Positions 7,811 to 60,162 of a stretch of 64,000 bases of DNA are shown here, piece by piece. The number at the start of each line of letters is the position of its first letter. The first letter of the stretch is position 1. The translations under genes and the position numbers were made by a program. The stretch spans positions 165,657 through 229,656 of IMG/VR virus record IMGVR_UViG_3300048672_001051, one strand, 5' to 3'. The notes beneath the pieces are model-generated. The model was not told the DNA's origin, made no database searches, and saw only the letters and a program-made list of their open reading frames with translations.

Positions 7811-8178
7811 AAATTCCTTAAACCTGTATACGGTATTTTTTTACCCATCAGATATAACCTTGTATTCTTGCGATCAACATCATCTTTAAAACTTCCATGT
7901 TGCATATTATTACTTGTAAAATATTTTAAATATTTATATTCTAAATAGCCGACTTTATAAAAATCCTTAGAAGTGCCTATAAAAAAAGTATGCCAATTAT
8001 TAATATCTCTAGTTTGACCGGTTTTAAATTTGCCTAGGTTTAGATGAGGAATTAAATAATATCTAGCGCGCTCCCAAAATAATTTAATATCATTTGTAAG
8101 GTAAATTTTATTCAGTGCATTAAAAATTGAAGCATATTTTAAATATTCTAAAACTTTTTCTGGTGTGTCGTAAATCAT
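7807..8178 (-). CDS. LRxL-array paralog
   Basis: FWERARY, QHG, LRNL end. Confidence 0.8.
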   Translation of the reverse strand: MIYDTPEKVLEYLKYASIFNALNKIYLTNDIKLFWERARYYLIPHLNLGKFKTGQTRDINNWHTFFIGTSKDFYKVGYLEYKYLKYFTSNNMQHGSFKDDVDRKNTRLYLMGKKIPYTGLRNL

Positions 8179-47990: not shown

Positions 47991-48015
47991 ACTTAACTCC
48001 TAAGCGAGCTGATCC

Positions 48016-48411
48016 TCATAACAGACCATTTTGCTTTTGCTTTTGATTCGCTCCGGCGATACCAGTACAGTTATCCTGCGCTGCTTTAAGCCGCTGAATA
48101 TACACTGTTAAGTCCTGGCCGGTCTTTACGCGAACGTTATTAATAAACAAGGCGATAACACCTTGAGCGAATGAGATGCCTAGCCAGACATTAGCCTTCT
48201 TAGCCAAATAGGCTTCGTCAGAAGGTTTGATGCCAGCCGCTTCCAGCACCAAGTCAGGCGTTACGCCGCTACTAGAGGGCTCGAACGCACCGAAGAGTAT
48301 CGGCACAAAATCATTCGCGCCATACTCTTCGGTGGTATGAGAATCTGCAAAGCATACCATTATGGTGCTCCTAATAATTAACCTTGAAGTGTTTAGCTTC
48401 AAGTGCCGCAA
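48016..48411 (-). CDS. Hypothetical protein
   Basis: Probable start MVCFAD after AGGAG; C-terminus runs through the promoter-like motif. Confidence 0.55.
   Translation of the reverse strand: MRHLKLNTSRLIIRSTIMVCFADSHTTEEYGANDFVPILFGAFEPSSSGVTPDLVLEAAGIKPSDEAYLAKKANVWLGISFAQGVIALFINNVRVKTGQDLTVYIQRLKAAQDNCTGIAGANQKQKQNGLL
48024..48044 (-). promoter_or_regulatory. Phage promoter-like motif
   Basis: AAAAGCAAAAGCAAAATGGTCTGTTATGAGGAT. Confidence 0.75.
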
Positions 48412-48676
48412 TCACATCCGCTTTGTACTGCGGATGATCTTCGGCAGAGTCACTGATGTTCACCTCTTGAGTAGTAGAGGTGAAATGATTCTGCCACGAA
48501 TCATCTGGCCACTGGGCCTGTGGATCGTTACAAGCTGAGTCGTGGCAAGATGCCGACCATAGCTCGTAGCAAGCACTGGCCACTTCGGACGGCGTACCAC
48601 CGTCCGCTATTATTACATCCAAAGCCTTCTTAGCTTTGGCATTTTGATTCTGATGGTGAGTCAGGTTAATTTTCAT
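48371..48676 (-). CDS. Hypothetical protein
   Basis: GAGG SD. Confidence 0.6.
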   Translation of the reverse strand: MKINLTHHQNQNAKAKKALDVIIADGGTPSEVASACYELWSASCHDSACNDPQAQWPDDSWQNHFTSTTQEVNISDSAEDHPQYKADVIAALEAKHFKVNY

Positions 48677-48740
48677 GATGAATCCTCAAGAGCTTTTAGA
48701 AGGGAGCTCTTATTATAAACCCTAAAATCCGAGTGCAGCG

Positions 48741-49004
48741 TTAGTTCAGAAGAAGAAACTCTGGGTCTACTAATTCTTCGATGTAGACCTCCAAAGTTTC
48801 TTCCGCTTTATACCGGCGCACGATGTCGTGCTTGATCCCTGAAGCGACTACCAGAAAATGGTAGTCCCGCTCAAATATCAGGAATGTGCCATCGACGTTT
48901 ATGTCGATGTCGCGCGCTTTAAATGCAGCGCGCAGTTCTTGCACTTGTTGCTCGTTCATGTATTTTCTCCTTATTAAGATGGGCATGACCCCGAATAATA
49001 ACAA
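48741..49004 (-). CDS. Hypothetical protein
   Basis: Probable start MNEQQ after TAAGGAG. Confidence 0.6.
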   Translation of the reverse strand: MLLFGVMPILIRRKYMNEQQVQELRAAFKARDIDINVDGTFLIFERDYHFLVVASGIKHDIVRRYKAEETLEVYIEELVDPEFLLLN

Positions 49005-49015
49005 ACCTCATAACA

Positions 49016-49030
49016 GACCATTTTGCTTTT
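49016..49030 (-). promoter_or_regulatory. Phage promoter-like motif
   Basis: AAGATCAAAAGCAAAATGGTCTGTTATGAGG. Confidence 0.75.
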
Positions 49031-49182
49031 GATCTTTATGGGACGCCAGTGTTTAACGGTACATTGGAAACCGATAGGTTATTATTTTCATAATAATTCC
49101 TCTTTGTTAGCAATCAAACATATAAGTACTATTATCAAATACTTATATGTTTGATTGAGGGTTGTGAGAAACCCTCAAAATA

Positions 49183-49368
49183 TTACTTCTTCCGTCTAGG
49201 TCGCCGACCTTTCCCTGACCCCTTTTTAAGGATCAGGGTTTTAACAATACGATGCTTCCCAAGGCGCATATCACGGGAGGCATAGTACTCTCCGTTATAT
49301 TCAGCTGGCCAAATACTCCAGTCTATTCCTTTGTATTCATCGGGTCCTTCCATTACAAGGACCCCCAA
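49183..49368 (-). CDS. Small basic protein
   Basis: Lys/Arg-rich tail. Confidence 0.5.
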   Translation of the reverse strand: MGVLVMEGPDEYKGIDWSIWPAEYNGEYYASRDMRLGKHRIVKTLILKKGSGKGRRPRRKK

Positions 49369-49646
49369 CCATTAGCCACAGCCCAGTCTCGAGCTGCCTC
49401 AACAGTCTGGAAAGTGTTAAAGGCTACTTTGCTGTAGCCTTTTGAGCGGAAAGGAGAGCACAAATACGTGCTCAAAATTCCTTTAACATGGAGAGTGAAT
49501 ACACCTTCACTCTCTTTCCGGACTATGAATCCGTTAAAACTCCAAGTTTCCATAATGAAACTCCTTAATAAGAACAGGCTCATTACACCTGTACACACTT
49601 TTGGAATGGAGAGTGTGCAAAAGAACTCCAAGGAATTATTCCACAT
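49353..49646 (-). CDS. Hypothetical protein
   Basis: Probable start METWS after TAAGGAG. Confidence 0.55.
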   Translation of the reverse strand: MWNNSLEFFCTLSIPKVCTGVMSLFLLRSFIMETWSFNGFIVRKESEGVFTLHVKGILSTYLCSPFRSKGYSKVAFNTFQTVEAARDWAVANGWGSL

Positions 49647-49732
49647 ATGGATATTATAAAACTAATACCCATAAATTGAATAACTTAAGTAGTTCTTTAT
49701 TTATACTGCCGAACTACGTGAGCAGTCTTCTT

Positions 49733-50035
49733 TTAAAGACCGAAGAGGTCTGCAATGGCATTAGCCACTGCAAGAAGGTCTTGGTCAATGCAGCTCAGGG
49801 GTGTGTCCCCTAAGCTAACGTGTCCGTCAATGACGACCCACAAATAGCGGCCTTCGTCGCCAAAGGTGACAAAGATTTCCGCCATGCCGCCAGCCTCTGC
49901 AGCTTCGACGAGTTGCTCGAAGCTTGCGACCTTTCCGTCAATCTCGACGGACTTTATCAGGCCTTGCAGTTGGTTAATATCCATAATGTATTCTCCAAAA
50001 TGATGGGCATCACCCCAATGTTGACACTTTACCAA
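49733..50035 (-). CDS. Hypothetical acidic protein
   Basis: Probable start MDINQ after GGAG. Confidence 0.6.
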   Translation of the reverse strand: MVKCQHWGDAHHFGEYIMDINQLQGLIKSVEIDGKVASFEQLVEAAEAGGMAEIFVTFGDEGRYLWVVIDGHVSLGDTPLSCIDQDLLAVANAIADLFGL

Positions 50036-50148
50036 TGCGGCAGGTGGTCAACGATAACCCGTATTACAATTATAAGAACCAACTAAGGATTCTCATAAGT
50101 GTAACATGTATGCAATTATACTCCCGCATACAAGGGGAGTTTCGCATG

Positions 50149-50334
50149 TTAGGGATAAACACGAACCCCTAACATGCAAGCCTTCACCTCGATCTCGCGA
50201 GGTGAAGGAGGTAATTGCGTGAACTGGGCGGGGTGGACTTCCCCCAAGACCAGTTCGACCATTGCGTCATACTCGGCCTGACGCGCGGCCTTTTCAGACT
50301 TGCGGGAAGCCTGAAAGAGATCTATGCTGAACAT
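50149..50334 (-). CDS. Hypothetical protein
   Basis: AGGAG SD; downstream of a promoter-like motif. Confidence 0.6.
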   Translation of the reverse strand: MFSIDLFQASRKSEKAARQAEYDAMVELVLGEVHPAQFTQLPPSPREIEVKACMLGVRVYP

Positions 50335-50370
50335 AGAGCACTCCTAAGAAAGAGGACAATCCTCACAAAA

Positions 50371-50391
50371 GACCATTTTGCTTTTGCTTTT
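50371..50391 (-). promoter_or_regulatory. Phage promoter-like motif
   Basis: AAAAGCAAAAGCAAAATGGTCTTTTGTGAGGAT. Confidence 0.75.
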
Positions 50392-50541
50392 GGTCTCGCG
50401 GAGGTACGAATTGGTGAGTTGGTTACAAGTTAGATTTCCCGTCTAACCAACTCACCGCACTATTGTTTCTGCTTCGGATCTTGATCTTGATCTTGATCCT
50501 AGTAGAAACAACCTACAGGGTTTGTGGCAACCCTCGTAACA

Positions 50542-50612
50542 GACCATTTTGCTTTTGCTTTTGCTTTGGCTTTTGCTTTTGCTTTTGCTTTTGCTTTTGC
50601 TTTTGCTTTTGC
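50542..50612 (-). promoter_or_regulatory. Phage promoter-like motif with 10 tandem AAAAGC hexamers
   Basis: Plus strand GACCATTTT then (GCTTTT)x10 at 50551-50610, one copy GCTTTG. Confidence 0.75.
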
Positions 50613-50649
50613 GGAGTGTAGAGAAATTCTACACTCCACCAATAACCCC

Positions 50650-51078
50650 TTAAAGGACAGTTAGATTGCACGGAATAACTGCTAACAATTTAGTCAGCTC
50701 CTCCTTATTTAGAACTGTGTCTCCATTTTTCTTCCTCCAATCATTAGCAGACCAGTACTTGACGTATTTTAGAACCATCTTAAGGTAATCTACCTCTTTA
50801 GCTGGGCCTGACAATATCAAATCGACAGGTCTAGACCTGTCTTTAATTAACCCTAACGAACTAGTTAAGGTGAGGATTGCCTTTGCAGATGGCAATCCTG
50901 TGCTAAATATTTCTAGCTGTTTATGTTTACTCATAGAGAGACCTTGGTAATCTGCCGTCAACAATACGTCTGACTTGTAAGGCACTACTACCTTTTTGTA
51001 GTCCTTGTCTTGTAGGGGTACAGACAATTCTAAATGAATTGTAACTGTGTTATCTGCAGTTTTACTTGATAAGTTCAT
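50650..51078 (-). CDS. Degenerate RNase H-like protein
   Basis: YVKYWSANDWRKKNGDTVLNKEE resembles the RNase HI WxxxGWxxxxxxPVKNxDL segment; catalytic acids not evident. Confidence 0.45.
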   Translation of the reverse strand: MNLSSKTADNTVTIHLELSVPLQDKDYKKVVVPYKSDVLLTADYQGLSMSKHKQLEIFSTGLPSAKAILTLTSSLGLIKDRSRPVDLILSGPAKEVDYLKMVLKYVKYWSANDWRKKNGDTVLNKEELTKLLAVIPCNLTVL

Positions 51079-51124
51079 AATTGTATCCTAGAAGTGGGGC
51101 TGCTATTACACAGCCCCGTTGGGT

Positions 51125-54100
51125 TTAAGCTTGTAAAGCTTGGATTAAACGGTACATCATTGACTCTGTATACATGTCGTATACTTTGCCATCAATGACC
51201 GCACCTTCAGCATCTTTCAACAAGACAAAGTTACTTGTCAATGGTGATTGATCGCTGAACATCAACGCATCGAGGGATGGTGCGCTCAAGTGCAAGGCAG
51301 CTACTTGACGCATCACTGCCATGAACTTAGCGCAGAACTGGTCTACGCTCATGTTCAATGAGCTGAAGTTGAACAGCAAGCCATTTGTGAAAACATCCAC
51401 AACAGCCTCTTTAGCCGCAGCTAGCCGGGCGATATACTCATCACGGCTTTCATCTTTTTTCTGCAAGATGAAACCAGGACGTATTATCTCGCTGACAGCC
51501 AGCTTCGAGCCAAGGCTTGAATGCTTCATGCCGTTCATAGCCTCTTCCTGCACCAACACACCAATTACGTATGCAACGGTGTTAAAGAATTCCTCATGCA
51601 TAGCTGCAGGAATGTCCGCCAATCCTTTACCATCCATACGTACAGAAGTATGGTATGTGAAGAATCGTTGTAGGTTCTTGGTATAAGAACCTACGTTGGC
51701 TTTCGCATCAGCAGATTCCTTGATAGTTGCAAACAACTCAACCCAAGAGAACTGATTAACGCTTGCGCCGCCAAAGCCAAGAGCGTTCATCTCTTTGGCC
51801 AGGTAGTTTTGATGCCACTTAGCAGCGAAGTACTTATCATCAAGCACCTTAGCTTCAAAAGTGTTCAACTTCACTTTACCATGTGAAGTCAAGCGAACCA
51901 AGTCACCGTCTGCATCATTTTGCAATGATAACAAGTAGTTAGCTGGCGCGAACACCGCGCAGTTGAAGATCTCAGCCATGTCTTTGTTCAACATGTCTTC
52001 TTCTACGAAGTTGGCCTCGGCTTCAGCTGCGATGCGCTTAGCTTTCAGGTAAGCGTTGCTGTCACGGCCTTGACCAGCTTTTTCAAACTTGGCGTTGGCC
52101 CGGTTAAGCTGTTGCAGCGCGTGGTGACGCTTAGGCAGCTTACTGTGTACCATCATACCAGTTTGTAGCTCTGGCATGATTACAGGATGCTTGGTAGCCA
52201 GCATTGTGCCACCATTACGCATGGCCAGGCACCACAGCTCATTGGCTTTAGAAGCCCAAGGAGCGCAGATCAAAGCGCCATACATACCCTCAACTTTCAG
52301 GCGACCCAACTGCTTACCCAAGATCTCGCATTGGGTGTATTGGAGCATGTTGACCGAGAAGTTCTCGACAAATGCTCCGATTGTTGGTTTGGCTTTTAAG
52401 TTCAAGGTGTACTCATCAACCTCATACTGACCAACCAGACCGCGAACGGCCTTGAGGAAGGTGTTAAAGTACCCTTGACTTTGAATCATTGTTGCATAGG
52501 CAGATGTTTCAGCCATATTCCCACAAAGGATGCGTTGCCCTGTTAAGTAGGTCAGTGGTGTACCTGCCTTGTCAGTCAACTCAACCCAACGTACATTAGG
52601 ATCGTTGATACCTAATACACAGGCAACGTCCACAAAGAACGCGCGGTGAACATACCCTTCACCTAATGTGTCTAGGTCTAGCCCATATGTTGCCACCAAA
52701 CGGGCGATCTTACCAACAACAGAAGCTAGTGGTAGTGTATATACCCCAGCGGCTGTTTTGTCGCTCAGACGACCCTGCACCCAATCTAGGGCCATGTTGA
52801 CGTCGTCTTTCTTGTCAGAATTAAGCTCGAGAGACATTGCATGTTGCAGCATGTCTTGAACCATCTGTTGGCCGTGAGTGGTACGCATCATGTCGAACTC
52901 GCTCGACACGACGTTAACCACTTTTGGTTTGCGAGTGATAACACCAGACTCGCGCAACTCACGTAGCGCATCTGGCAGTGGAGCCATAGAGCCAGCGTCT
53001 GCCAACTCTGCGACTTTGTTAAACACGACAGCTATCAGCAATGGATCATCGCCAATGATGTCATGTTTCTTATACGCTGCTTCCAACAACTTAGCAGCGT
53101 TATCAATGTAGCTGTTGACCACAAAGTCACGGTCAACAAACTTATAACCATGACTAATTGTGTAATGGTTAGTCGCAACCATCTGTACATCGTTCAGCAC
53201 ACAGACTTCGACCTCAAGTCCGTTGATCTCAACAACTTCCCAAATTGAGTTCAACTCGGTTGGATCGTTGATGATGTCCATAACTTCGCAGTTAGGATGT
53301 TTGGCTTGATACAGACCAGCCAAACCACCTTTATATGAAGCTTTTGAAGCCAGAGATACGCCAGCATCAGCCAAGTCTTTATCGACAAAACCTGCCCATG
53401 AGAGGGTTGACTTAATCAAGCCTTCGGTATTATCGCCAACAGCACGACAGAAACCAACTGTCAGCATTGTATCGCTGTCAGCCAAAATATTACCTGCCAC
53501 AAGAGCGTTACGCAGCTCAGTGGCAGTCTTAAGGTTGCGCTTGGCAACAGCTTTAGCCTTACCGGCTTTAGACGCCTTTACAGCGTCGTAGGCAGCTGTT
53601 GCAGCGTCAAGTGCTACGTTAGGGTCACGCAACACCCAAACCTCACCAAAGGCGAATCCGACGCCGTCCTTATTGCACAGCTTCTCAAAGCGAGAAGCTG
53701 TGTGCTTGATGCTCAAGGCTGACAGCAGTGAACCATCAGCTTGTTCAGTCAGCATGTAGCCTAACTGTTCATGCTCACGAATGTAACCGTCAGCAGCGTG
53801 GCTGCCAGATACCAAGCCATAAACACCTGGCTTGAAATGCTCCAGATACTGGTTTACAGGGTACTTACTGTAAACCATTGGATGTGAAACGGGTGTAACA
53901 GCACCGTTCGCTGCGCGAAGTACGAGGTGCTTCGCTGGATCAGCGATCAGCGCTTCGTAAGACAGGTTGCCAGCGCGCAGGAGGATCAATTTCTCGATCC
54001 AACTCAAGCTCATGAGCTTGATATTAAAGCCACGAGCACCAGTGTCGTGAAACACATGGATACGGCTCAGCGCATCAACCACTTCAGCAGTGGTATTACT

Positions 54101-54760
54101 GCTAGTGATCTTGACACTAGCTTGAACAAAGCCTAGCACAGATTCAACTGCACTGTACTTCATTGCAGTGGCCTTCATGCCATGACCTAGGCGGATATTA
54201 ACACCACCTTTGTCAAACTGAGGCTTTTCCGCAATGTTACGGCGGAAAGCCTCAGCCATCGGCTGAATTGGGTACGAGTCCAATTGGCCCGCGCACTTCA
54301 CAGCCCACTCTATTAGAGCGAGCTTGTCATCTGTCAAGCCGTGACCGAAATAGACCAACACTTTGGCGATGGAGTTAGAGTACTCCAGGCCACGGGTGTT
54401 GACGAATATTGAATAAAGCTCAAGCATCGCCCGAGCCTTGTTCAAACCTCCGACAACTTCTAGGTCCTCCTGATCCAATTCCACTTTCGTGAAACCAGAT
54501 ACAGCAGGGGCGTTAATGACACGCAAGATGTCACCCTTCGCAACGGCCATTGATTCTACATAGTAGAACTCTTTGGCCATGTGCTGGATGGTGGCATCCA
54601 GCTTATCGCGGTCGACAAGGTGTGGGTACACCTCAGCACGGTCTTTTTTGGAGCCGGAAACATAGGCCAAAACAGCGGCCTTGTTGGACCAGTTCAGGAC
54701 TGATTGATACATAGCTGTGGTCTTCATGGTTGAAGTTCCTTTGGTGGTTGAGTTAGTCAT
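51125..54760 (-). CDS. Single-chain two-barrel DNA-directed RNA polymerase 1 (YonO/QDE-1-like fold, putative)
   Basis: 1211 aa. Catalytic-type QNDADGD, upstream ATKHP (RxP-like), beta-like RAVG..GLIKS, C-terminal KANVG and LVQEEAMNGMKH shared with 17155-20778. Confidence 0.75.
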   Translation of the reverse strand: MTNSTTKGTSTMKTTAMYQSVLNWSNKAAVLAYVSGSKKDRAEVYPHLVDRDKLDATIQHMAKEFYYVESMAVAKGDILRVINAPAVSGFTKVELDQEDLEVVGGLNKARAMLELYSIFVNTRGLEYSNSIAKVLVYFGHGLTDDKLALIEWAVKCAGQLDSYPIQPMAEAFRRNIAEKPQFDKGGVNIRLGHGMKATAMKYSAVESVLGFVQASVKITSSNTTAEVVDALSRIHVFHDTGARGFNIKLMSLSWIEKLILLRAGNLSYEALIADPAKHLVLRAANGAVTPVSHPMVYSKYPVNQYLEHFKPGVYGLVSGSHAADGYIREHEQLGYMLTEQADGSLLSALSIKHTASRFEKLCNKDGVGFAFGEVWVLRDPNVALDAATAAYDAVKASKAGKAKAVAKRNLKTATELRNALVAGNILADSDTMLTVGFCRAVGDNTEGLIKSTLSWAGFVDKDLADAGVSLASKASYKGGLAGLYQAKHPNCEVMDIINDPTELNSIWEVVEINGLEVEVCVLNDVQMVATNHYTISHGYKFVDRDFVVNSYIDNAAKLLEAAYKKHDIIGDDPLLIAVVFNKVAELADAGSMAPLPDALRELRESGVITRKPKVVNVVSSEFDMMRTTHGQQMVQDMLQHAMSLELNSDKKDDVNMALDWVQGRLSDKTAAGVYTLPLASVVGKIARLVATYGLDLDTLGEGYVHRAFFVDVACVLGINDPNVRWVELTDKAGTPLTYLTGQRILCGNMAETSAYATMIQSQGYFNTFLKAVRGLVGQYEVDEYTLNLKAKPTIGAFVENFSVNMLQYTQCEILGKQLGRLKVEGMYGALICAPWASKANELWCLAMRNGGTMLATKHPVIMPELQTGMMVHSKLPKRHHALQQLNRANAKFEKAGQGRDSNAYLKAKRIAAEAEANFVEEDMLNKDMAEIFNCAVFAPANYLLSLQNDADGDLVRLTSHGKVKLNTFEAKVLDDKYFAAKWHQNYLAKEMNALGFGGASVNQFSWVELFATIKESADAKANVGSYTKNLQRFFTYHTSVRMDGKGLADIPAAMHEEFFNTVAYVIGVLVQEEAMNGMKHSSLGSKLAVSEIIRPGFILQKKDESRDEYIARLAAAKEAVVDVFTNGLLFNFSSLNMSVDQFCAKFMAVMRQVAALHLSAPSLDALMFSDQSPLTSNFVLLKDAEGAVIDGKVYDMYTESMMYRLIQALQA

Positions 54761-54763
54761 TAA

Positions 54764-55225
54764 TCAGCACTCCTGTGTGAACATGACAGTAAGATCATGG
54801 AACGTTTCATTGCCCCAAGACCAAGGTGTGTCAGTCAGTATCAACAAATCTGACCGACGGTTAATAAACTGCACTAAGCGATAGCTCGTAGACTCACGAG
54901 CATCTAGGCTAAACTTCTTAATGCCAAAATGTTTTTTCAAACACTCCTTAATACTAAGAAGCTCAGCTACGCCGAGCTTGCCGACACACGCGAGATCAAC
55001 TACCTCTCGTTTCGTTACAATGAGGTAACAGTTGTGTGTATAAAACACTGTTACCTTTTTAGCCTCTGCATAGTCCAACACGCACTCGGGGCTTACGATA
55101 TCCTGTAAGCCATGCATGTACTCAGGATACGCCTGAGCTTCGATTGATTGCACCTGAGTACAAACAGCCATGAACTGGGTCAGATCCATGTTCTTGGTGA
55201 CGATAATATTATCCATATTATGCAA
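54764..55225 (-). CDS. GNAT-like fold protein (putative)
   Basis: IEAQAYP...VVDLA...SLDARESTSY. Confidence 0.4.
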   Translation of the reverse strand: MHNMDNIIVTKNMDLTQFMAVCTQVQSIEAQAYPEYMHGLQDIVSPECVLDYAEAKKVTVFYTHNCYLIVTKREVVDLACVGKLGVAELLSIKECLKKHFGIKKFSLDARESTSYRLVQFINRRSDLLILTDTPWSWGNETFHDLTVMFTQEC

Positions 55226-57350
55226 TCACCTGAACACAGTTAGTGCCATCATAGTCCATATAGCTGTACTCACTAATGGATTTAACGGTACCTCGGGCCA
55301 CGTTGACCGTGTCGGCATACCTTGCAACTTGGCTTGTTACACCGTAAGAAGTTGCTGACAAGTACACTGGTACACCTACAGCTCGGACAAAGTCCAAAAT
55401 CATCGGCGTTACCACGCTTGCCGATATTTGTGAACGACCTTCGATAGAGTCGATCATGTACCCACCACATGCGGTTTTAAATACCCACATGTGTCCAAGG
55501 ATGGTGCTACCTTGGCGGAACACGTAGTTAGCCGACTTAGAATCAGTCCAGCTTTCTACGCATACAGCATGGCCTGCACCGCCAAGCTTCTGGCAGCAAG
55601 AGGTCAGCTCTCCGATGTACAAGTTGCGTACATCATTCTTAGCCAACTTCTCCATGACGAACTTGTCATTCTCTGCCACAATTTCTGGCAGTTCACAAAC
55701 AACATGGGAGTTGTTTGTTTTCACGGCAAAAGTCAGTGCCGCCTGAACATCAGGAGTTACCAAGTACTGCTCAGCAGTCTCTTTGGACACTCCTCGGCTC
55801 ACCAGAGTGTTGACAATTGCAGTCTTTGGCGAGTTGCCCAAAGTCCAATCAATTTCAAGCATGTGCTCAAAAATGATTGTTTGCAATTGCTCAGTAGAGG
55901 CAACTTGCTTCTTGAATTTCTCTGGCATTGCAGCCGCACTTGCGTACAAATGCTCGCTACGCCAGTCGATGTGGCGCATCAAATAAATTGCACGGTACTC
56001 TTCCAACGTATCTGCCGCAGCACCCAAATAGTGGCTCATGCGGATTTTTGCAATGACAGCCTCGCCATTGCAGTCGGTGTGCTTGCTGATACGCAAGGAC
56101 TTATCGACTTTAACAAATCCTTCTACTACAAGCATATTGAGCTCGTGCAGATCTTTCACTCCAGCACGCGTCACTAATGTGCCAGCTGGCAAATGTTTTG
56201 CCAACCCTAAGGCTGCAAAAGTGATGAAAGGGTTGAACGCCGAACACACTGGCGTCATTTTGGCCTTTCTCACATGACCTTCTGCGAGGGCTGGCAACAT
56301 CTTGGCCCCGTCCCACCGTGCCTCGTTATACTCGGTCGGGAGCATTGCGTTTTTCTCGCAAAACTGACCACTTGCATACAACCACGCAAGGTCAGTAGTT
56401 GGGTACGAGGAAACTTTCACGCCCCAGTCTGCCTGGTTGCGGTAATACGTAGCCGACTCTTCCAACATAACGACTTGGCTCTCAGTGCCACGGTAGTCTT
56501 GTAGGATATCGAGCGCTACACTTTTTGTAGCTGGGTACCCAGCAGACTCGAGTGCCCAAAAATTTGGGTACTCTTTTGTAAGCTCGCCGTTGCTTATGTT
56601 CAAGCTGTGAACATAGCCGATTAGGCTATGGCCGCAAGTCTCCAAAGACTCTAAGCTTTTCTTGCTGACCGGGTAGGCTCTGTTCACATCGGATTTGAGC
56701 TGGTCTAAAGCAATCAACTGCAGCTTAGGCCAGGCAGCCCGTTCCCCATACAAGCTATACATTAAATCGTACAGCCCAACAACAAAATTATGGGCCGCGT
56801 CAGATCCAACGTCTGGAGCCACTTTATAGTACATGTTGTCGAGTAGACATCCATAGTACTTAAAGCTGTCGACAGCAGCAGATATATCTGCTGACCAGAG
56901 GCAATGGTCAGCCAAGGAGTTAACTTCCCAGCCAGCAAACGCGTTGAAGCGTTTATCCCAGTAACTACAGCGAGCTATGTCGCAGAATTCATCGCGAATA
57001 TCCGCAGTGATCCTAACTGTCATGTCGTGTCTTGTCACGACAATGTTCCACATGTCCAATTCAAAGCCATTTACGGCTGTAATTTGAACATCGTGATTGT
57101 AGCCATCATGGTCGCACAAGGCGTGAATAGCCGCCGCATCGCCAGCGAGTTCTGCTGGGATCAACACCATACGGCTAGATGTATCATAGCCGTAGTCCGG
57201 ATCACACACTGAGAAGCATGTGATCTCAATGTCGATTTGCTCGCCGGCCAACAGCCCACCGATAGCTTGACGACGATCAGCTTTCAAAGCAGCGTAAGCT
57301 GCTTTTTGTGCTGAACGCATGGCTGACTCTTTACGGGTCATATTAGTCAT
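55218..57350 (-). CDS. Large early protein with C-terminal GxxTxCCQ (PcfJ/GNAT-like) domain
   Basis: IGELTSCCQKLGGAG...MWV...IDSIE; start placed at MTNMT after AAGG. Confidence 0.6.
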   Translation of the reverse strand: MTNMTRKESAMRSAQKAAYAALKADRRQAIGGLLAGEQIDIEITCFSVCDPDYGYDTSSRMVLIPAELAGDAAAIHALCDHDGYNHDVQITAVNGFELDMWNIVVTRHDMTVRITADIRDEFCDIARCSYWDKRFNAFAGWEVNSLADHCLWSADISAAVDSFKYYGCLLDNMYYKVAPDVGSDAAHNFVVGLYDLMYSLYGERAAWPKLQLIALDQLKSDVNRAYPVSKKSLESLETCGHSLIGYVHSLNISNGELTKEYPNFWALESAGYPATKSVALDILQDYRGTESQVVMLEESATYYRNQADWGVKVSSYPTTDLAWLYASGQFCEKNAMLPTEYNEARWDGAKMLPALAEGHVRKAKMTPVCSAFNPFITFAALGLAKHLPAGTLVTRAGVKDLHELNMLVVEGFVKVDKSLRISKHTDCNGEAVIAKIRMSHYLGAAADTLEEYRAIYLMRHIDWRSEHLYASAAAMPEKFKKQVASTEQLQTIIFEHMLEIDWTLGNSPKTAIVNTLVSRGVSKETAEQYLVTPDVQAALTFAVKTNNSHVVCELPEIVAENDKFVMEKLAKNDVRNLYIGELTSCCQKLGGAGHAVCVESWTDSKSANYVFRQGSTILGHMWVFKTACGGYMIDSIEGRSQISASVVTPMILDFVRAVGVPVYLSATSYGVTSQVARYADTVNVARGTVKSISEYSYMDYDGTNCVQVIA

Positions 57351-57366
57351 ATTGAATGGCACCTTA

Positions 57367-57552
57367 TTAAGCTGCAAGAGCTTTGATGGCCATTTGATGA
57401 TCAATCATCGCCTCAGCAGCATCGTGCAGATGCTCAGACAATAATGACCAGTCGATTAGTTGATCTTTAGTGTTACAATCAACGGCGTAGGTAACGAAGT
57501 TCAACAAAGGAAGAAAATCCTTTGCTGAAACTTTAACTGCGCAGGCCAGCAT
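57367..57552 (-). CDS. Hypothetical protein
   Basis: TAATG overlap with the upstream gene; AAGG SD. Confidence 0.55.
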   Translation of the reverse strand: MLACAVKVSAKDFLPLLNFVTYAVDCNTKDQLIDWSLLSEHLHDAAEAMIDHQMAIKALAA

Positions 57553-58334
57553 TATGCTGCTACCTTCAAGGCAGCACGCAGGGAGCGGCTTGTAAGAGCC
57601 GCTGCGTTTGCACTCAAGCCATATACCGCCTCAAAGTCGCTGGCAGCCAGAGCTGCTTTCTTACTCAGAGCTGCAACGCGTGCAGCTCCTGCTTTGGTGA
57701 CAACACCACCGTCTTGGGCCGCAACCCACACGAGGTGGGCGCGGGCCTTTTCAGCACGCTTGACCATACGCAGGATTTCTCCTGCGGTTTTGACAGCTTC
57801 TGCTGTCAGTTTACGAGCAGCTGGCGTTGCAGCTTTGACAGCTGCAACTTTAGCTTTTGGTACATACACTTCCGCCGCAAGACGGTGGGTGTACACGTTT
57901 CGACGTACATCCCGGGCTTTGAAGCCAGTGCCACGTTTGGCACGTTTGGCTGCCTTGATGCCACAAGCGTGGCTGCCTGTCGCAGCGATTGCTGCGACCA
58001 CTGCCTTACGGCGAGCGGTTACAACCTCACGGGCGCTGTGCCCGTACTTAGCCGCAACAGCGGCGCTTGCGGCCTTACGGGCTACATTACGTGCAGCACG
58101 TGCAGCAGCGCTGGCTATGTTGCCAGCACGGGTTTTGCTACCGTCCGAACGACGGTTACGTTTGGTGCGTGCTGCGTTACGAGCAGCCTTGCGAGCTGCT
58201 CCTTCAAGTGCACCGTCAATGATGCTTGGGTAAACCCAAGCACCAGCAACTTCGTTAACAAGTTGGGTGTCAAAATCGACACCCATGATGACTGCGAGTA
58301 GTGCAAGCACTGACTCGATGAAGAAATTTTCCAT
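57552..58334 (-). CDS. Very basic Ala/Arg/Lys-rich early protein (histone H1-like composition)
   Basis: AARKAARNAAR-type repeats; AAGGAG SD before MENFF; hydrophobic N-terminus. Confidence 0.7.
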   Translation of the reverse strand: MENFFIESVLALLAVIMGVDFDTQLVNEVAGAWVYPSIIDGALEGAARKAARNAARTKRNRRSDGSKTRAGNIASAAARAARNVARKAASAAVAAKYGHSAREVVTARRKAVVAAIAATGSHACGIKAAKRAKRGTGFKARDVRRNVYTHRLAAEVYVPKAKVAAVKAATPAARKLTAEAVKTAGEILRMVKRAEKARAHLVWVAAQDGGVVTKAGAARVAALSKKAALAASDFEAVYGLSANAAALTSRSLRAALKVAA

Positions 58335-58409
58335 GATTTTGCTCCTTAACAATGAGGTTGGGATCATTAAACCCAAACTGCCTAGTACAGTGGGATAGGA
58401 TAACTAGGA

Positions 58410-58464
58410 TGCTGTTTCGTCCTTGATTGGACTCATCAGTTAGGCAAAGAAGCCTAATACAGCA
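58410..58464 (-). ncRNA. Hammerhead ribozyme, type III (HH-A)
   Basis: Minus strand reads UGCUGU A | UUAGGC uucuuu GCCUAA CUGAUGA GUCC aaucaa GGAC GAA ACAGCA. Complete CUGAUGA/GAAA core, GUA cleavage triplet, three perfect stems. Predicted cut between 58458 and 58457. Confidence 0.93.
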
Positions 58465-58502
58465 GGTAGTTTTTTATAGAAGCATACCTAGGCTTCTCTC
58501 TC

Positions 58503-58670
58503 TTATTTAAGCGCGAGGATTTCTCCTGTGCGCTTAATGAAGAACAGATTAAACCCAACAACTTCCGAAGAAGTTGTTGGGTTGACAATGCTAGCTACGA
58601 ACACGCCTTGGCCGTGCACGGCCAAGGCGTGTGTGTAGTCAGCGACTACGCGAACTTTTGGCTTGTTCAT
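58503..58670 (-). CDS. 55-aa early protein between HH-B and HH-A (not in ORF track)
   Basis: AAGGAG SD; MNKPKVRVVADYTHALAVHGQGVFVASIVNPTTSSEVVGFNLFFIKRTGEILALK. Confidence 0.65.
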   Translation of the reverse strand: MNKPKVRVVADYTHALAVHGQGVFVASIVNPTTSSEVVGFNLFFIKRTGEILALK

Positions 58671-58755
58671 ATGATTTTCTCCTTGAATGAAAGGCTCATT
58701 ACACCTTATCTCTACCTAGTATCGAGATGAATTTATCTAGGATGCTGATGTTACA

Positions 58756-58829
58756 TGTTTGCCTCATCAGTGCATAAGGAACAACCTATATGCAGACGCC
58801 CTTATAAGAATCTATAAGGGCGTTTCGGC
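58756..58829 (-). ncRNA. Hammerhead ribozyme, type II (HH-B)
   Basis: Minus strand: GCC GAAA CGCCCUUAUA gauucu UAUAAGGGCG UC | UGCAUAuAGG uuguu CCUUAUGCA CUGAUGA GGC aAACA. GUC triplet, cut 58795/58794. Loop I UGUU can pair with the 3' tail AACA. Confidence 0.9.
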
Positions 58830-58830
58830 C

Positions 58831-59247
58831 TTATTTCTGGAGCTTATCTAGCTCCTCAGCGAGGAGGTCGCTAAGCTCAACTTTGATCAGCGCTAGCTGA
58901 TCAAGACGGGTGTGGTGACGCGCGTGATACGCGTCATTGAGGGCCTCTTGATGTTCCTTGCGGAACGAGGTCGTAACCTCCTCATGGTAGTACGAGTGGA
59001 GTTTGTACACCAAACTTATTGCATCCTCTCGGGATGCAATTGCAGTGAGAGCCCATTCACGGGCCATCAGCGAACGGCCAGTATTAAGACGGTCAAGACC
59101 GTCACGGACAGCAGCCTCGTACAGTGCTTTGCGAGCAGCGCTCGCATTGTCACGGATGGCGGTGGTACGTTTGGCGTTGCTTGGAGCAACCTCCAGAATA
59201 ATGACGAGCAATGCCAACAACAAGAGTACAACACAATATGACAACAT
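58831..59247 (-). CDS. Membrane-anchored early protein between HH-C and HH-B
   Basis: N-terminal hydrophobic segment; AAGGA SD. Confidence 0.7.
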   Translation of the reverse strand: MLSYCVVLLLLALLVIILEVAPSNAKRTTAIRDNASAARKALYEAAVRDGLDRLNTGRSLMAREWALTAIASREDAISLVYKLHSYYHEEVTTSFRKEHQEALNDAYHARHHTRLDQLALIKVELSDLLAEELDKLQK

Positions 59248-59280
59248 AATGGTATTCCTTTGGTAAGACAGTGATAGACA

Positions 59281-59344
59281 GGTTTGCCTTCATCAGTGCA
59301 TGAGTAACCAACTCATACAGACCTTACAATGTAAGGTTTCGGCA
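59281..59344 (-). ncRNA. Hammerhead ribozyme, type II (HH-C)
   Basis: Minus strand: UGCC GAAA CCUUAC auu GUAAGG UC | UGUAUGAGU ugguu ACUCAUGCA CUGAUGA A GGCA AACC. GUC triplet, cut 59320/59319. One extra A after the core; loop I GGUU can pair with tail AACC. Confidence 0.88.
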
Positions 59345-59388
59345 CAACCCTTTACTTATATACCACCAAGGGTTGGGTGGTCAGTGGA

Positions 59389-59460
59389 TCATTTGTACTC
59401 AGGGAAGAGTACTTTGATCCACTGCTCGTTCTCTAGAACGAGGATTTGAATTTGGTCCAT
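59389..59460 (-). CDS. 23-aa leader ORF (putative)
   Basis: AGGAG SD; MDQIQILVLENEQWIKVLFPEYK. Confidence 0.45.
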   Translation of the reverse strand: MDQIQILVLENEQWIKVLFPEYK

Positions 59461-59762
59461 GACTGGACTCCTATTCAGGTATTGAATCATGTTTGATTAG
59501 GCAATGATCCTTAGCCTTTGAAACGGGGGTAGGGGGCTCAACAGATGGTACCCCCCTATGTTTCCGAGGGTACCCACCCTATACAACACCTAGTCCACAA
59601 AAATAAAAATATTATTTTTAAGATTTTTTAAAGGAATTTTTTAAAGGAAACAAAAATATTTGGGGGTGGGGGCTAAAAACTAACTTTATCTTTGTATGCT
59701 ATCAACTTATTTCAAAAATAATATTTATATAAAATAATAACTATATAAGTATTATTTATACA

Positions 59763-59791
59763 TTGATTTTTATTCAAAACTAGCTCATAAT
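59763..59791 (+). promoter_or_regulatory. sigma70-like promoter
   Basis: TTGATT-17 bp-CATAAT upstream of the 59857 gene. Confidence 0.45.
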
Positions 59792-59856
59792 GTTAAAAAC
59801 AATTCTACTATTTTTATAGTAGGGAAACTATAACTATATTATGGAGGCTGTTAACG

Positions 59857-60162
59857 ATGGTCAATGTTGGTGCTAGAAAACTTACAGATAATTCACTGAT
59901 GCGTTATGGTGTATTGCCAATAGCTGGCGGTACTATGGTTGGAGGTGCTTTTGGAGTTAATGATAAGTATTTTAAAGACAACCCTAACACTAGTGTAATG
60001 GAGAGTATGGGTATTGGAGCTTTAGCTGGAGCAGGTTTGGGATTTGCTGGTATTGGTTTTTCTAAAGGCTACAAGTCTTACAAAACTTCTCTGTTTATTG
60101 AAAACAATGGCGGCTTGTCTGCTGCTCAACAACAAATGGCTAGGAAACTTAATATAACTTAA
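59857..60162 (+). CDS. Glycine-zipper membrane protein
   Basis: GGxxxGGAFG...GIGALAGAGLG; GGAGG SD. Confidence 0.65.
   Translation: MVNVGARKLTDNSLMRYGVLPIAGGTMVGGAFGVNDKYFKDNPNTSVMESMGIGALAGAGLGFAGIGFSKGYKSYKTSLFIENNGGLSAAQQQMARKLNIT

What the first reader, a model, noticed from the sequence alone, without database searches (positions are those of the whole stretch)
58335..58750. Unrecognised structured 5'-leader motif repeated between ribozyme and SD
Two leaders share the same layout on the minus strand: CAGCAUCCUAG ... stem with loop UACUAGG ... stem with loop UAAUGA ... UCAUU .. AAGGAG.AAAAUCAU (about 58335-58414 and 58671-58747). Stem sequences differ (ACUG/CAGU versus AUCUC/GAGAU; UUGGG/CCCAA versus AAGG/CCUU), but loop CUAGG can pair with upstream CCUAG and loop AAUGA with UCAUU next to the SD, giving two pseudoknots. 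The second half recurs at ~49560-49592 (ACAGG UGUAAUGAG CCUGU UCUUAUU AAGGAG). It could be a 5' nuclease block, a translational enhancer or an operator.
Basis: partly seen in the sequence, partly recalled or inferred. Interest (0 to 1): 0.7.

Follow-up and report, generated by a model that had tools for sequence, protein, structure and literature searches.

The report
Conserved pseudoknotted leader after phage ribozymes
A small group of uncultivated freshwater giant phages places the same folded RNA cassette (a pseudoknotted hairpin, often followed by a second hairpin) between a self-cleaving hammerhead ribozyme and the ribosome-binding site of several genes; no catalogue searched holds it, and it looks like a natural version of the ribozyme-plus-hairpin insulators built by synthetic biologists.

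Summary
The two minus-strand leaders (58743-58671 and 58410-58335) share one layout: AUCCUAGN, a G-poor linker, hairpin 1 (7-nt loop UACUAGG), an abutting hairpin 2 (loop GUAAUGA), AAGGAG, an A-rich spacer ending UCAU, AUG. One follows a type II hammerhead and the other a type III hammerhead. The window is the end of a 229.7-kb IMG/VR phage record.

I recovered 18 leader copies (17 distinct core sequences) from this phage, a 242.6-kb relative and metagenome contigs.
- Hairpin 1: 7 of 8 pairs show changes on both sides.
- Hairpin 2: 3 of 6 pairs show changes on both sides.
- First pseudoknot (CCUAGU with loop ACUAGG): paired in 99% of cells. Both flanking pairs change compensatorily (C-G, U.G, U-A; U-A, C-G).
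Pairing of the loop with UCAU at the start codon fits all 13 but is not proven.
- Hairpin 2 is optional and modular.

No Rfam family matches, and no description turned up in the papers searched. The most likely function is a cis-acting insulator and translation/stability leader of ribozyme-processed, highly structured mRNAs. This is inferred, not shown. A trans-factor operator is the main rival.

The parts
58753..58830 (-). Type II hammerhead upstream of leader A. The predicted cut lies between 58795 (C of GUC) and 58794.
   Evidence: Rfam RF02276, 35.4 bits, E 2.1e-5, just under the gathering score of 37. The core CUGAUGA/GAAAC and the stem I and III hairpins were read.
58736..58743 (-). Leader A: 5' single-stranded block AUCCUAGA. 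CCUAG is the 5' strand of pseudoknot 1.
   Evidence: Columns 3-8 of alignment A5. This copy has the only mismatch, A.A at pair 8-33.
58708..58728 (-). Leader A: hairpin 1 (AUCUC / GAGAU, plus an inner A-U next to a G.A mismatch). The loop holds UACUAGG.
   Evidence: Parse; covariation; centroid fold.
58691..58707 (-). Leader A: hairpin 2 (AAGGU / GCCUU, loop GUAAUGA). It abuts hairpin 1 with no spacer.
   Evidence: centroid fold.
58671..58690 (-). Leader A: tail UCAUUC, SD AAGGAG (58684-58679) and spacer AAAAUCAU before the AUG at 58670.
58410..58464 (-). Type III hammerhead upstream of leader B. The predicted cut lies between 58458 (A of GUA) and 58457. Its stem III 3' strand CAGC(A) runs into the leader.
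   Evidence: Rfam RF00008, 28.8 bits, E 5.9e-4, under the gathering score of 48.5. Core match. Relatives score 43.8-46.5 bits.
58403..58410 (-). Leader B: 5' block AUCCUAGU. CCUAGU is the 5' strand of pseudoknot 1.
58377..58391 (-). Leader B: hairpin 1 (ACUG / CAGU, loop UACUAGG).
58358..58376 (-). Leader B: hairpin 2 (UUGGG / CCCAA, loop UUUAAUGAU).
58335..58357 (-). Leader B: tail CCUCAUUGUU, SD AAGGAG (58347-58342) and spacer CAAAAUC before the AUG at 58334. The gene encodes 260 aa and is conserved in relatives.
49551..49630 (-). Leader C: hairpin 2 alone (49592-49574, ACAGGU/GCCUGU, loop GUAAUGA). It follows a different 7-bp hairpin (49618-49593) whose loop CUCCA complements the upstream UGGAG (49630-49626). 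SD at 49566-49561, AUG at 49553. The loop can form 7 pairs with UCAUUAU at the start codon.

Best explanation
What it is (shown). It is a modular cis-acting 5'-UTR cassette of phage mRNAs. The block CCUAGU pairs with six of the seven loop bases of hairpin 1 (U-ACUAGG). This makes a kissing-type pseudoknot in which the G-poor 7-16-nt linker spans the stacked helices. Hairpin 2 (GG-U.G closed, loop GUAAUGA), when present, abuts hairpin 1 with no spacer and so can stack on it. It is followed within 4-11 nt by AAGGAG, an A-rich spacer and AUG. The cassette always lies near the 5' end of a transcript unit. It sits after a type III or type II hammerhead, whose cut would leave a 5'-OH, base-paired ribozyme remnant, or after the G+C-rich hairpin at the start of the operon.

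How it most likely works (inferred). The operon's coding RNA is unusually structured. The compact local fold would act as an insulator: it keeps the ribozyme and the ribosome-binding site from pairing with each other or with the ORF. Each processed cistron would then get the same exposed, strong initiation site, and perhaps extra stability. That is the logic of the synthetic RiboJ part (hammerhead plus hairpin before the RBS). The hairpin 2 loop may also touch UCAU at the start codon.
For: Structure.
- 17 distinct core sequences come from at least 7 phage genomes or contigs whose gene-B protein is only 36-37% identical by BLASTP.
- Hairpin 1: 7 of 8 pairs have changes on both sides. 0 of 500 shuffles reach the covariation score, and slid controls drop from 88% to 27-42% paired.
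- Pseudoknot 1: 99% of cells are paired. Pair 3-38 is C-G in 13, U.G in 2 and U-A in 2 sequences. Pair 8-33 is U-A in 15 and C-G in 1. The U.G intermediates point to RNA pairing rather than a DNA palindrome.
- Hairpin 2: pairs 3-19 (UA 5, CG 4, AU 2) and 4-18 (AU 9, GC 2, UA 2) covary.
- The two hairpins abut in 12 of 13 copies (the later copies read).
- The longest stems (7-8 bp) have the longest linkers (15-16 nt).

Placement.
- The motif directly follows GAAACAGC of a hammerhead in most copies. Otherwise it follows the operon-start hairpin.
- An SD and a start codon follow every copy.
- There are exactly two core copies per complete genome, both at the head of one operon.

Context.
- ORF RNA in this operon folds far better than shuffles (z -11; z -2.5 to -8.4 for all but one ORF).
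- Clustered hammerheads that cut phage polycistronic RNA are documented (PMC3088659).
- The leader and the ribozyme are separable. A distant relative has the hammerhead with a plain 30-nt leader, and other hammerheads here carry a different leader.
Against: - No expression, cleavage or probing data exist. No RNA run was listed.
- In nested-fold models the SD is not especially open (P unpaired 0.06-0.53). The leaders do not fold better than shuffles (z about 0). Pseudoknots are not modelled in either calculation.
- The four central pairs of pseudoknot 1 (CUAG with CUAG) never vary, and both loops are almost invariant. A purely architectural helix would be expected to drift as freely as the hairpin 1 stem. 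This argues for sequence-specific recognition by something else.
- CUAG is self-complementary, so four of the six pairs would exist even without selection for pairing.
- The copies are few and partly related by descent, so the covariation rests on a handful of independent events.
Confidence: 0.45

Rival explanations
1. It is an operator for a trans-acting factor. A phage-encoded or host RNA-binding protein, or a small RNA carrying CUAG, recognises the invariant loops UACUAGG and GUAAUGA and the block AUCCUAGU. It co-regulates the few cistrons that carry the cassette, in the manner of coat-protein, RegA or ribosomal-protein operators.
For: The loops and the single-stranded block are nearly invariant while the stems drift. 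That is the usual signature of protein-bound hairpins. The central CUAG of both pseudoknot strands never varies. Only 2-3 cistrons per genome carry the motif, like a small regulon. The hairpin 2 loop can pair with or lie next to the start codon, a good place for a repressor.
Against: No candidate binding protein was identified. The neighbouring proteins have no Pfam or PHROG match. The compensatory changes at the two pairs flanking CUAG show that pairing itself is selected, which a pure protein-site model does not need. The two models are not exclusive.
Confidence: 0.25
2. It is a two-state translational switch. UCCU within AUCCUAG is an anti-SD that can pair with AGGA of the SD (off state). 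Pairing of the overlapping CCUAGU with the hairpin 1 loop (on state) frees the SD. Ribozyme cleavage, temperature or a factor sets the balance.
For: Minimum-energy folds of copies A and B pair UCCU with the SD region. Leader C has different letters but the same logic: UCCUUG can pair with UAAGGA, and the overlapping UGGAG can pair with the loop CUCCA.
Against: The anti-SD pairing is only 4-5 bp and closes a large multiloop. In partition-function models the SD's partner differs from copy to copy, and the AUCCUAG block takes at most 0.26 of it. No covariation supports this helix.
Confidence: 0.12
3. It is an accessory of the ribozyme. The cassette stacks on the short stem III, or guides folding, to speed cleavage, prevent re-ligation or regulate cutting.
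For: CAGC(A) of stem III runs directly into AUCCUAG in most copies. After the type II hammerhead of copy A, CAUCAG can pair with the core CUGAUG.
Against: The same cassette follows a non-hammerhead element at the operon start. In two copies it lies about 90 nt from the hammerhead. A relative's hammerhead has no cassette. Hammerheads with another leader exist in the same operon. The cassette keeps a fixed relation to the SD, not to the ribozyme.
Confidence: 0.08
4. It is a small-molecule riboswitch with an H-type pseudoknot aptamer, of the preQ1 or SAM-II kind.
For: The fold is compact and pseudoknotted next to an SD, with invariant unpaired bases.
Against: No Rfam riboswitch matches even at E up to 10. 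The downstream genes are unrelated small orphan proteins and a basic, Ala-rich protein, not metabolic genes. The motif is repeated within one operon. No consistent SD sequestration is predicted.
Confidence: 0.04
5. It is a DNA-level element (an inverted-repeat operator or a promoter), or merely a recent duplication without function.
For: CCTAG and CTAGG are inverted repeats. The two window copies could in principle be a duplication.
Against: The half-site spacing varies widely. U.G (that is, T/G) intermediates keep RNA pairing but not a DNA palindrome. The hairpin stems covary. No sigma-70-like promoter is found in the region. The motif is conserved across phages whose adjacent protein is only 36-37% identical. 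The flanking genes differ.
Confidence: 0.03

Closest known systems
RiboJ-type synthetic ribozyme insulators (hammerhead followed by a hairpin before the RBS; from my own knowledge of Lou et al. 2012, and the part appears in papers listed)
   Same: The order of parts is the same: self-cleaving hammerhead, then local hairpin(s), then SD and start codon. The ribozyme remnant stays on the mRNA. The same cassette is reused before different ORFs.
   Different: This one is natural. The hairpin module is pseudoknotted with invariant loops and often has a second hairpin. It also occurs after a non-hammerhead 5' element. Neither cleavage nor insulation has been tested.
Clustered hammerhead ribozymes in phage and prophage polycistronic transcripts (Perreault et al. 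2011, PMC3088659)
   Same: Several type II and III hammerheads flank single genes in one operon (three within 1.1 kb here). This implies processing into single-gene mRNAs.
   Different: In the passages I read, that work describes the ribozymes and mentions no conserved leader between the ribozyme and the SD. The cassette described here is a separate module.
Pseudoknotted translational operators at initiation sites (E. coli rpsO/S15, T4 gene 32; from my own knowledge)
   Same: A hairpin loop pairs with a flanking single strand next to the SD and AUG. The possible pairing of the hairpin 2 loop with UCAU(G) would put the SD in a pseudoknot loop.
   Different: No sequence or Rfam similarity. No autoregulatory protein is known. 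The well-supported pseudoknot lies upstream of the SD rather than over it.
Loop-strand kissing complexes and antisense recognition loops (7-nt loops with a YUNR turn; from my own knowledge)
   Same: A 7-nt loop has one unpaired 5' base and six bases available for pairing. CUAG fits the YUNR pattern.
   Different: The partner here is in cis, 13-25 nt upstream. No trans RNA is known.
Exoribonuclease-resistant RNAs (xrRNA) of flaviviruses and plant viruses
   Same: A compact pseudoknot near a 5' end could resist 5'-3' decay.
   Different: There is no three-way junction or ring topology, and no Rfam match. The 5' end here is already buried in the ribozyme's stem I.

Membership tests
Any Rfam 15 family (for the leader itself) | Covariance-model match at or near the gathering score | tested here: not met
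   No match at gathering scores in the 64-kb window. At E up to 10 over 58200-58950, only the two hammerheads and chance hits outside the leaders appear. At E up to 0.5, nothing matches the leaders in six related loci.
Hammerhead type III (RF00008), flanking element of copy B | Core CUGAUGA ... GAAA, three stems, cleavage triplet NUH | tested here: met
   The core and stems were read. The triplet is GUA, and stem III is UGCUG/CAGCA. CM score 28.8 bits (E 5.9e-4), below the gathering score of 48.5. Relatives score 43.8-46.5.
Hammerhead type III (RF00008), flanking element of copy B | Self-cleavage activity | not testable with these tools
Hammerhead type II (RF02276), flanking element of copy A | Permuted order (stem II open), core GAAAC ... 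GUC ... CUGAUGA | tested here: met
   35.4 bits, E 2.1e-5, full model 1-66, just under the gathering score of 37. Stem II is only 3 bp.
RiboJ-like ribozyme insulator (functional analogue, not a sequence family) | A hammerhead remnant at the 5' end plus hairpin(s) directly before the RBS | tested here: met
   The anatomy is present in the window copies and in the copies from related contigs that directly follow a hammerhead.
RiboJ-like ribozyme insulator (functional analogue, not a sequence family) | Expression becomes independent of upstream and downstream context | not testable with these tools
   This needs reporter assays.
H-type pseudoknot riboswitches (preQ1-II/III, SAM-II/V) | Match to the aptamer model and association with the matching metabolic genes | tested here: not met
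   No Rfam match. The downstream genes are orphans without Pfam or PHROG hits.
Drum RNA motif (checked because I recalled, wrongly, a link to ribozymes) | Followed by a terminator, rarely in 5' UTRs, associated with particular protein genes | tested here: not met
   The paper describes drum as followed by terminators and rarely in 5' UTRs (PMC5737381). The leader here always precedes an SD. No Rfam match.
New motif proposed here | AUYCUAGN, 7-16 nt G-poor linker, 4-8 bp stem with 7-nt loop URCUAGR whose last six bases complement the 5' block, then an SD within 1-5 nt or after hairpin 2 | tested here: met
   The feature set was derived from these same copies. All 18 copies fit. CM R1 scores 35-51 bits for 16 of them and 20-22 bits for the two U-A variants. 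The best match lacking the CUAG loop scores 19.8 bits in 229 kb, so the two U-A variants are told apart by their layout, not by score.

The most novel reading that the evidence does not exclude
The cassette is a new class of structured regulatory RNA coupled to ribozyme processing. One version: a kissing-type pseudoknot plus a start-codon-contacting hairpin makes translation of a cistron depend on its release by the hammerhead, or on a dedicated phage factor that reads the invariant CUAG and GUAAUGA loops. Another version: it is a bacterial-virus counterpart of exonuclease-resistant RNAs. Either would give clustered phage ribozymes a defined role in gene expression, which has been open since 2011.
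Probability: 0.15. Interest if true: 0.8.

Novelty: new variant of a known kind. Interest (0 to 1): 0.58.

Why it matters
Hammerheads cluster in phage operons, and their biological purpose is still unclear (PMC3088659). Here each ribozyme is followed by a conserved, covarying leader that ends in a strong ribosome-binding site. This suggests a complete natural expression unit: cut, fold, translate. The same design was invented independently in synthetic biology as RiboJ. If confirmed, three things would follow.
- It would show what ribozyme processing is for in these phages.
- It would add a compact pseudoknot motif with clear covariation to the catalogue of phage cis-regulatory RNAs.
- It might supply a new portable insulator part.

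Its known range is narrow: one clade of freshwater jumbo phages, with two or three copies per operon. That limits its general importance.

Tried and rejected
- Phage GenBank megablast of 57000-60000: no match.
- Viral-contig scans with CATCCTAG..ACTAGG: only chance hits outside this genome. Stricter patterns gave 0 hits or one relative.
- The search for related loci with the gene-B protein: nothing.
- Pfam and PHROGs on 18 proteins of the window: almost nothing, and no structural-gene label for the operon.
- ESM Atlas look-alikes for the 728-aa and 260-aa proteins: uninformative.
- Word-index search with the 707-aa protein: one short contig only, which I did not fetch.
- RNA-seq: no RNA run was listed.
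- Drum motif: rejected after reading the paper.
- Amber-suppressor or anticodon-loop mimicry (the loop holds CUA and the partner UAG): rejected. The 15 phage tRNAs include no suppressor, and long ORFs read normally in code 11.
- CTAG avoidance: not seen (690 observed, 668 expected).
- Triple helix between the pyrimidine-rich linker and the purine strand of hairpin 1: I found no mirror-repeat relation on inspection.
- T4-type late promoter in the UAUAAAAAAC element before the type III hammerhead: cannot be judged, because such strings are common in this AT-rich genome.
- The weak model hit at 62304-62271 has no CUAG loop and lies antisense to the genes there. I treat it as chance.

Full report
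**Where the window lies.** The window is the last 64 kb of a 229,656-bp IMG/VR virus record (CheckV completeness 98%, G+C 34.7%). It is a jumbo phage assembled from a freshwater metagenome. The region from about 48000 to 59500 is far richer in G+C (40-56%) than the genome as a whole. Its proteins match no Pfam or PHROG family.

**Checking the observation.** On the minus strand the order of elements is as follows.
- An AT-rich promoter-like stretch.
- A 5' element starting GACUAGGUGU with a G/C-rich hairpin (59594-59500), then a 23-codon ORF.
- A type II hammerhead variant (about 59344-59286), then a 138-aa gene.
- A type II hammerhead (58830-58753), then leader A (58743-58671) and a 55-codon ORF.
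- A hairpin followed by UAUAAAAAACU.
- A type III hammerhead (58464-58410), then leader B (58410-58335).
- A 260-aa gene ("gene B"), a 61-aa gene, a 707/728-aa gene (depending on the start codon) and larger genes.

Rfam finds the two hammerheads next to the leaders at E 2e-5 and 6e-4. Both fall below the gathering scores but have intact cores. Both leaders read the same way: AUCCUAGN, a G-poor linker, hairpin 1 with UACUAGG in the loop, hairpin 2 with UAAUGA in the loop placed directly after hairpin 1, AAGGAG, an A-rich spacer ending UCAU, and AUG. The stems differ between the two copies. The layout occurs exactly twice in the genome and not in the reversed-pattern control. The hairpin 2 half recurs at 49592-49551.

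**Finding homologues.** No close DNA relative exists in the phage collection. The gene-B protein has a few metagenomic relatives at 36-37% identity. Their contigs carry the same leader upstream of gene B and upstream of unrelated small genes. One pattern scan of viral contigs found a second jumbo phage of 242.6 kb. One scan of metagenome contigs found seven more contigs. A covariance model of the core (R1) then found two further diverged copies. In all there are 18 copies with 17 distinct core sequences.

The copies come in two forms.
- Long form: hairpin 1 plus hairpin 2.
- Short form: the SD follows hairpin 1 after 1-5 nt.

Each of the two complete genomes has exactly two core copies, both at the head of the same operon. 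Some contigs have three. Several Logan contigs begin inside the hammerhead that precedes the leader. This is expected if the repeat breaks assemblies.

**Secondary structure.** For hairpin 1, seven of eight pairs show changes on both sides, for example A-U 10 versus G-C 7 at the loop-closing pair. No shuffle of 500 reaches the covariation score. Sliding the 3' partner by 1-3 columns drops the paired cells from 88% to 27-42%. For hairpin 2, the two inner G-C pairs and the U.G closing pair are fixed, and the outer pairs covary (UA 5, CG 4, AU 2; AU 9, GC 2, UA 2). The hairpins abut with no spacer in 12 of 13 long-form copies. The exception has an extra hairpin inserted between them.

**Pseudoknot 1.** CCUAGU pairs with the loop ACUAGG in 99% of cells. 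The four central pairs (CUAG with CUAG) never vary. They would be complementary in any case, because CUAG is its own reverse complement. The informative pairs are the two flanking ones, and both change in a compensatory way.
- Pair 3-38 is C-G in 13 sequences, U.G in 2 and U-A in 2.
- Pair 8-33 is U-A in 15 sequences and C-G in 1. Window copy A has the single mismatch.

The U.G intermediates and the variable spacing argue for RNA pairing and against a DNA palindrome.

The geometry is that of a kissing complex (my reasoning from known RNA stereochemistry). One unpaired U lies on the 5' side of the loop, and six paired bases continue into the 3' strand of the stem. The 5' block must then be joined to the stem by a linker long enough to span both helices. 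The linkers are 7-16 nt, and the longest stems have the longest linkers. In nested-fold models this helix is often as probable as hairpin 1 itself.

**Pseudoknot 2.** In the 13 copies that carry hairpin 2, about nine have at most 3 complementary bases there (for eleven copies; read directly for the other two). It is therefore not a conserved feature.

An alternative partner is UCAU just before, or overlapping, the start codon. It pairs with the loop AUGA in all 13 copies, with two wobble-compatible single changes and no double change. In leader C, whose spacer is otherwise different, all seven loop bases pair with UCAUUAU. UC before AUG is not a general habit of this genome: only 2 of 28 strong-SD starts have it. 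None of the short-form leaders has UCAUG. This pairing is therefore plausible but unproven. Co-inheritance of hairpin 2 and the spacer as one block would give the same pattern.

**Relation to the ribozymes.**
- Most copies directly follow GAAACAGC of a type III hammerhead.
- Window copy A follows a type II hammerhead.
- Two copies lie about 90 nt beyond a hammerhead.
- Four or five copies follow the G/C-rich hairpin at the operon start.
- A more distant gene-B relative has the hammerhead followed by a plain 30-nt leader.
- Type II hammerheads of these phages often carry a different conserved leader.

Ribozyme and cassette are therefore separable modules. What stays constant is the position of the cassette: just downstream of a stable 5'-terminal structure and just upstream of an SD.

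**How it most likely works.** After cleavage the mRNA would begin with a 5'-OH on the first, base-paired nucleotide of hammerhead stem I. That already resembles a 5' stabiliser (established knowledge of 5'-end-dependent decay), so a further nuclease block is not obviously needed.

The coding RNA of this operon is unusually structured. The 55-codon ORF and its 3' flank fold at -93 kcal/mol against -49 for shuffles, z = -11. All but one of the other ORFs tested, here and in relatives, give z from -2.5 to -8.4. In such RNA, a self-contained fold between the ribozyme and the ribosome-binding site would stop both from being trapped in alternative pairings. It would also give each cistron the same initiation region. 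This is the principle of the synthetic RiboJ insulator.

I commit to this cis-acting insulator/leader model at about 0.45. The structure is shown. The function is inferred.

Several points count against it.
- Nested-fold models do not predict an especially open SD.
- The leaders are not thermodynamically exceptional.
- The near-invariance of both loops and of CUAG is better explained if something reads the sequence.

For that reason the main rival, at 0.25, is an operator for a phage or host factor. A switch between an anti-SD pairing (UCCU with AGGA) and pseudoknot 1 is suggested by some folds and by the parallel logic of leader C. It is weakly supported.

**Comparison with what is known.** No Rfam family matches the leader. 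My recollection that the drum motif was linked to ribozymes was wrong. Perreault et al. 2011 describe clustered hammerheads in phage operons and propose processing into single-gene mRNAs. The passages I read mention no leader motif. Literature searches for hammerheads in jumbo phages or for natural RiboJ-like units found nothing relevant. I class this as a new RNA motif of a known general kind (structured 5'-UTR leader), with an unusual and consistent coupling to ribozymes.

**Verdict.** The feature is real, conserved and structured. Interest 0.58.

Noticed in passing
window 59286-59344 (-): A third hammerhead. It is type II with one extra base between A9 and stem II (CUGAUGA-A-GGC / GCC-GAAAC) and a predicted cut after GUC. 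Rfam did not report it even at E up to 10. It is followed by a different conserved leader (AAACCUGUCUAUCACUGUCUUACCAAAGGA...AUG), which also follows type II hammerheads in L130, L136 and L138.
   Followed up: partly
window 58465-58670 (-): The 55-codon ORF after leader A, with its 3' flank, folds at -93 kcal/mol against -49 for shuffles (z = -11). It holds two perfect 14-bp hairpins, one with a UUCG loop. Its protein has no detectable similarity to the small ORFs at the same place in relatives. It could be a ribozyme-excised structured RNA as much as a gene. All but one of the other ORFs tested in this operon and its relatives are also over-structured (z -2.5 to -8.4).
   Followed up: partly
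window 59500-59700 (-); L125 2480-2831; L130 60-243; L131 3718-4000 (-); L134 10000-10188 (-); L136 8168-8330 (-): The operon start is conserved. It has AT-rich, often tandemly repeated promoter-like units (five 27-nt repeats in L131), then GACUAG(G)UGU, then a G/C-rich hairpin of the GGGUGGG...CCCACCC kind. In relatives the AUCCUAG leader follows it directly, so it occupies the place a hammerhead has elsewhere. No Rfam match. Whether it cleaves itself is unknown.
   Followed up: partly
window 58465-58497 (-); L130 520-550 and 1210-1240; L136 about 7868-7907 (-); L138 about 306-345: A conserved hairpin followed by UAUAAAAAACU (GAAGCCUnnnnAUGCUUCUAUAAAAAACU) lies between a stop codon and the next element, usually a ribozyme. 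It could be an internal promoter or a processing or termination signal. It cannot be judged in this AT-rich genome.
   Followed up: partly
window 49593-49634 (-): Upstream of the lone hairpin 2 (leader C), a 7-bp hairpin abuts it with no spacer. Its loop begins CUCCA, which complements UGGAG seven pyrimidine-rich bases upstream. This is the same topology as the main leader but with different letters. The overlapping UCCUUG can instead pair with the SD (UAAGGA).
   Followed up: partly
L136 5843-6339 (-): About 440 nt of apparently non-coding, hairpin-rich RNA lies between a weak type III hammerhead match (27.9 bits) and the third leader copy. It includes an 18-bp hairpin preceded by AUUCUAGU.
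   Followed up: no
L150 284-373: A more distant relative of gene B (AT-rich contig) has a canonical type III hammerhead followed by a plain 30-nt leader without the cassette. The cassette was therefore either gained within the clade or lost in this lineage.
   Followed up: yes
G000 131161-147961 (outside the window): A cluster of 15 tRNA genes, all on the minus strand, with no suppressor tRNA among them.
   Followed up: no
window 48000-59500: This operon has 40-56% G+C in a genome of 34.7%. Combined with the strong RNA folding, this suggests selection on RNA structure, or a module of different origin.
   Followed up: no
L123, L124, L128, L129, L152-L154 (position 1): Independent Logan assemblies all break inside the hammerhead just upstream of the gene-B leader. 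This is consistent with the ribozyme-leader unit being a repeat within those genomes.
   Followed up: no
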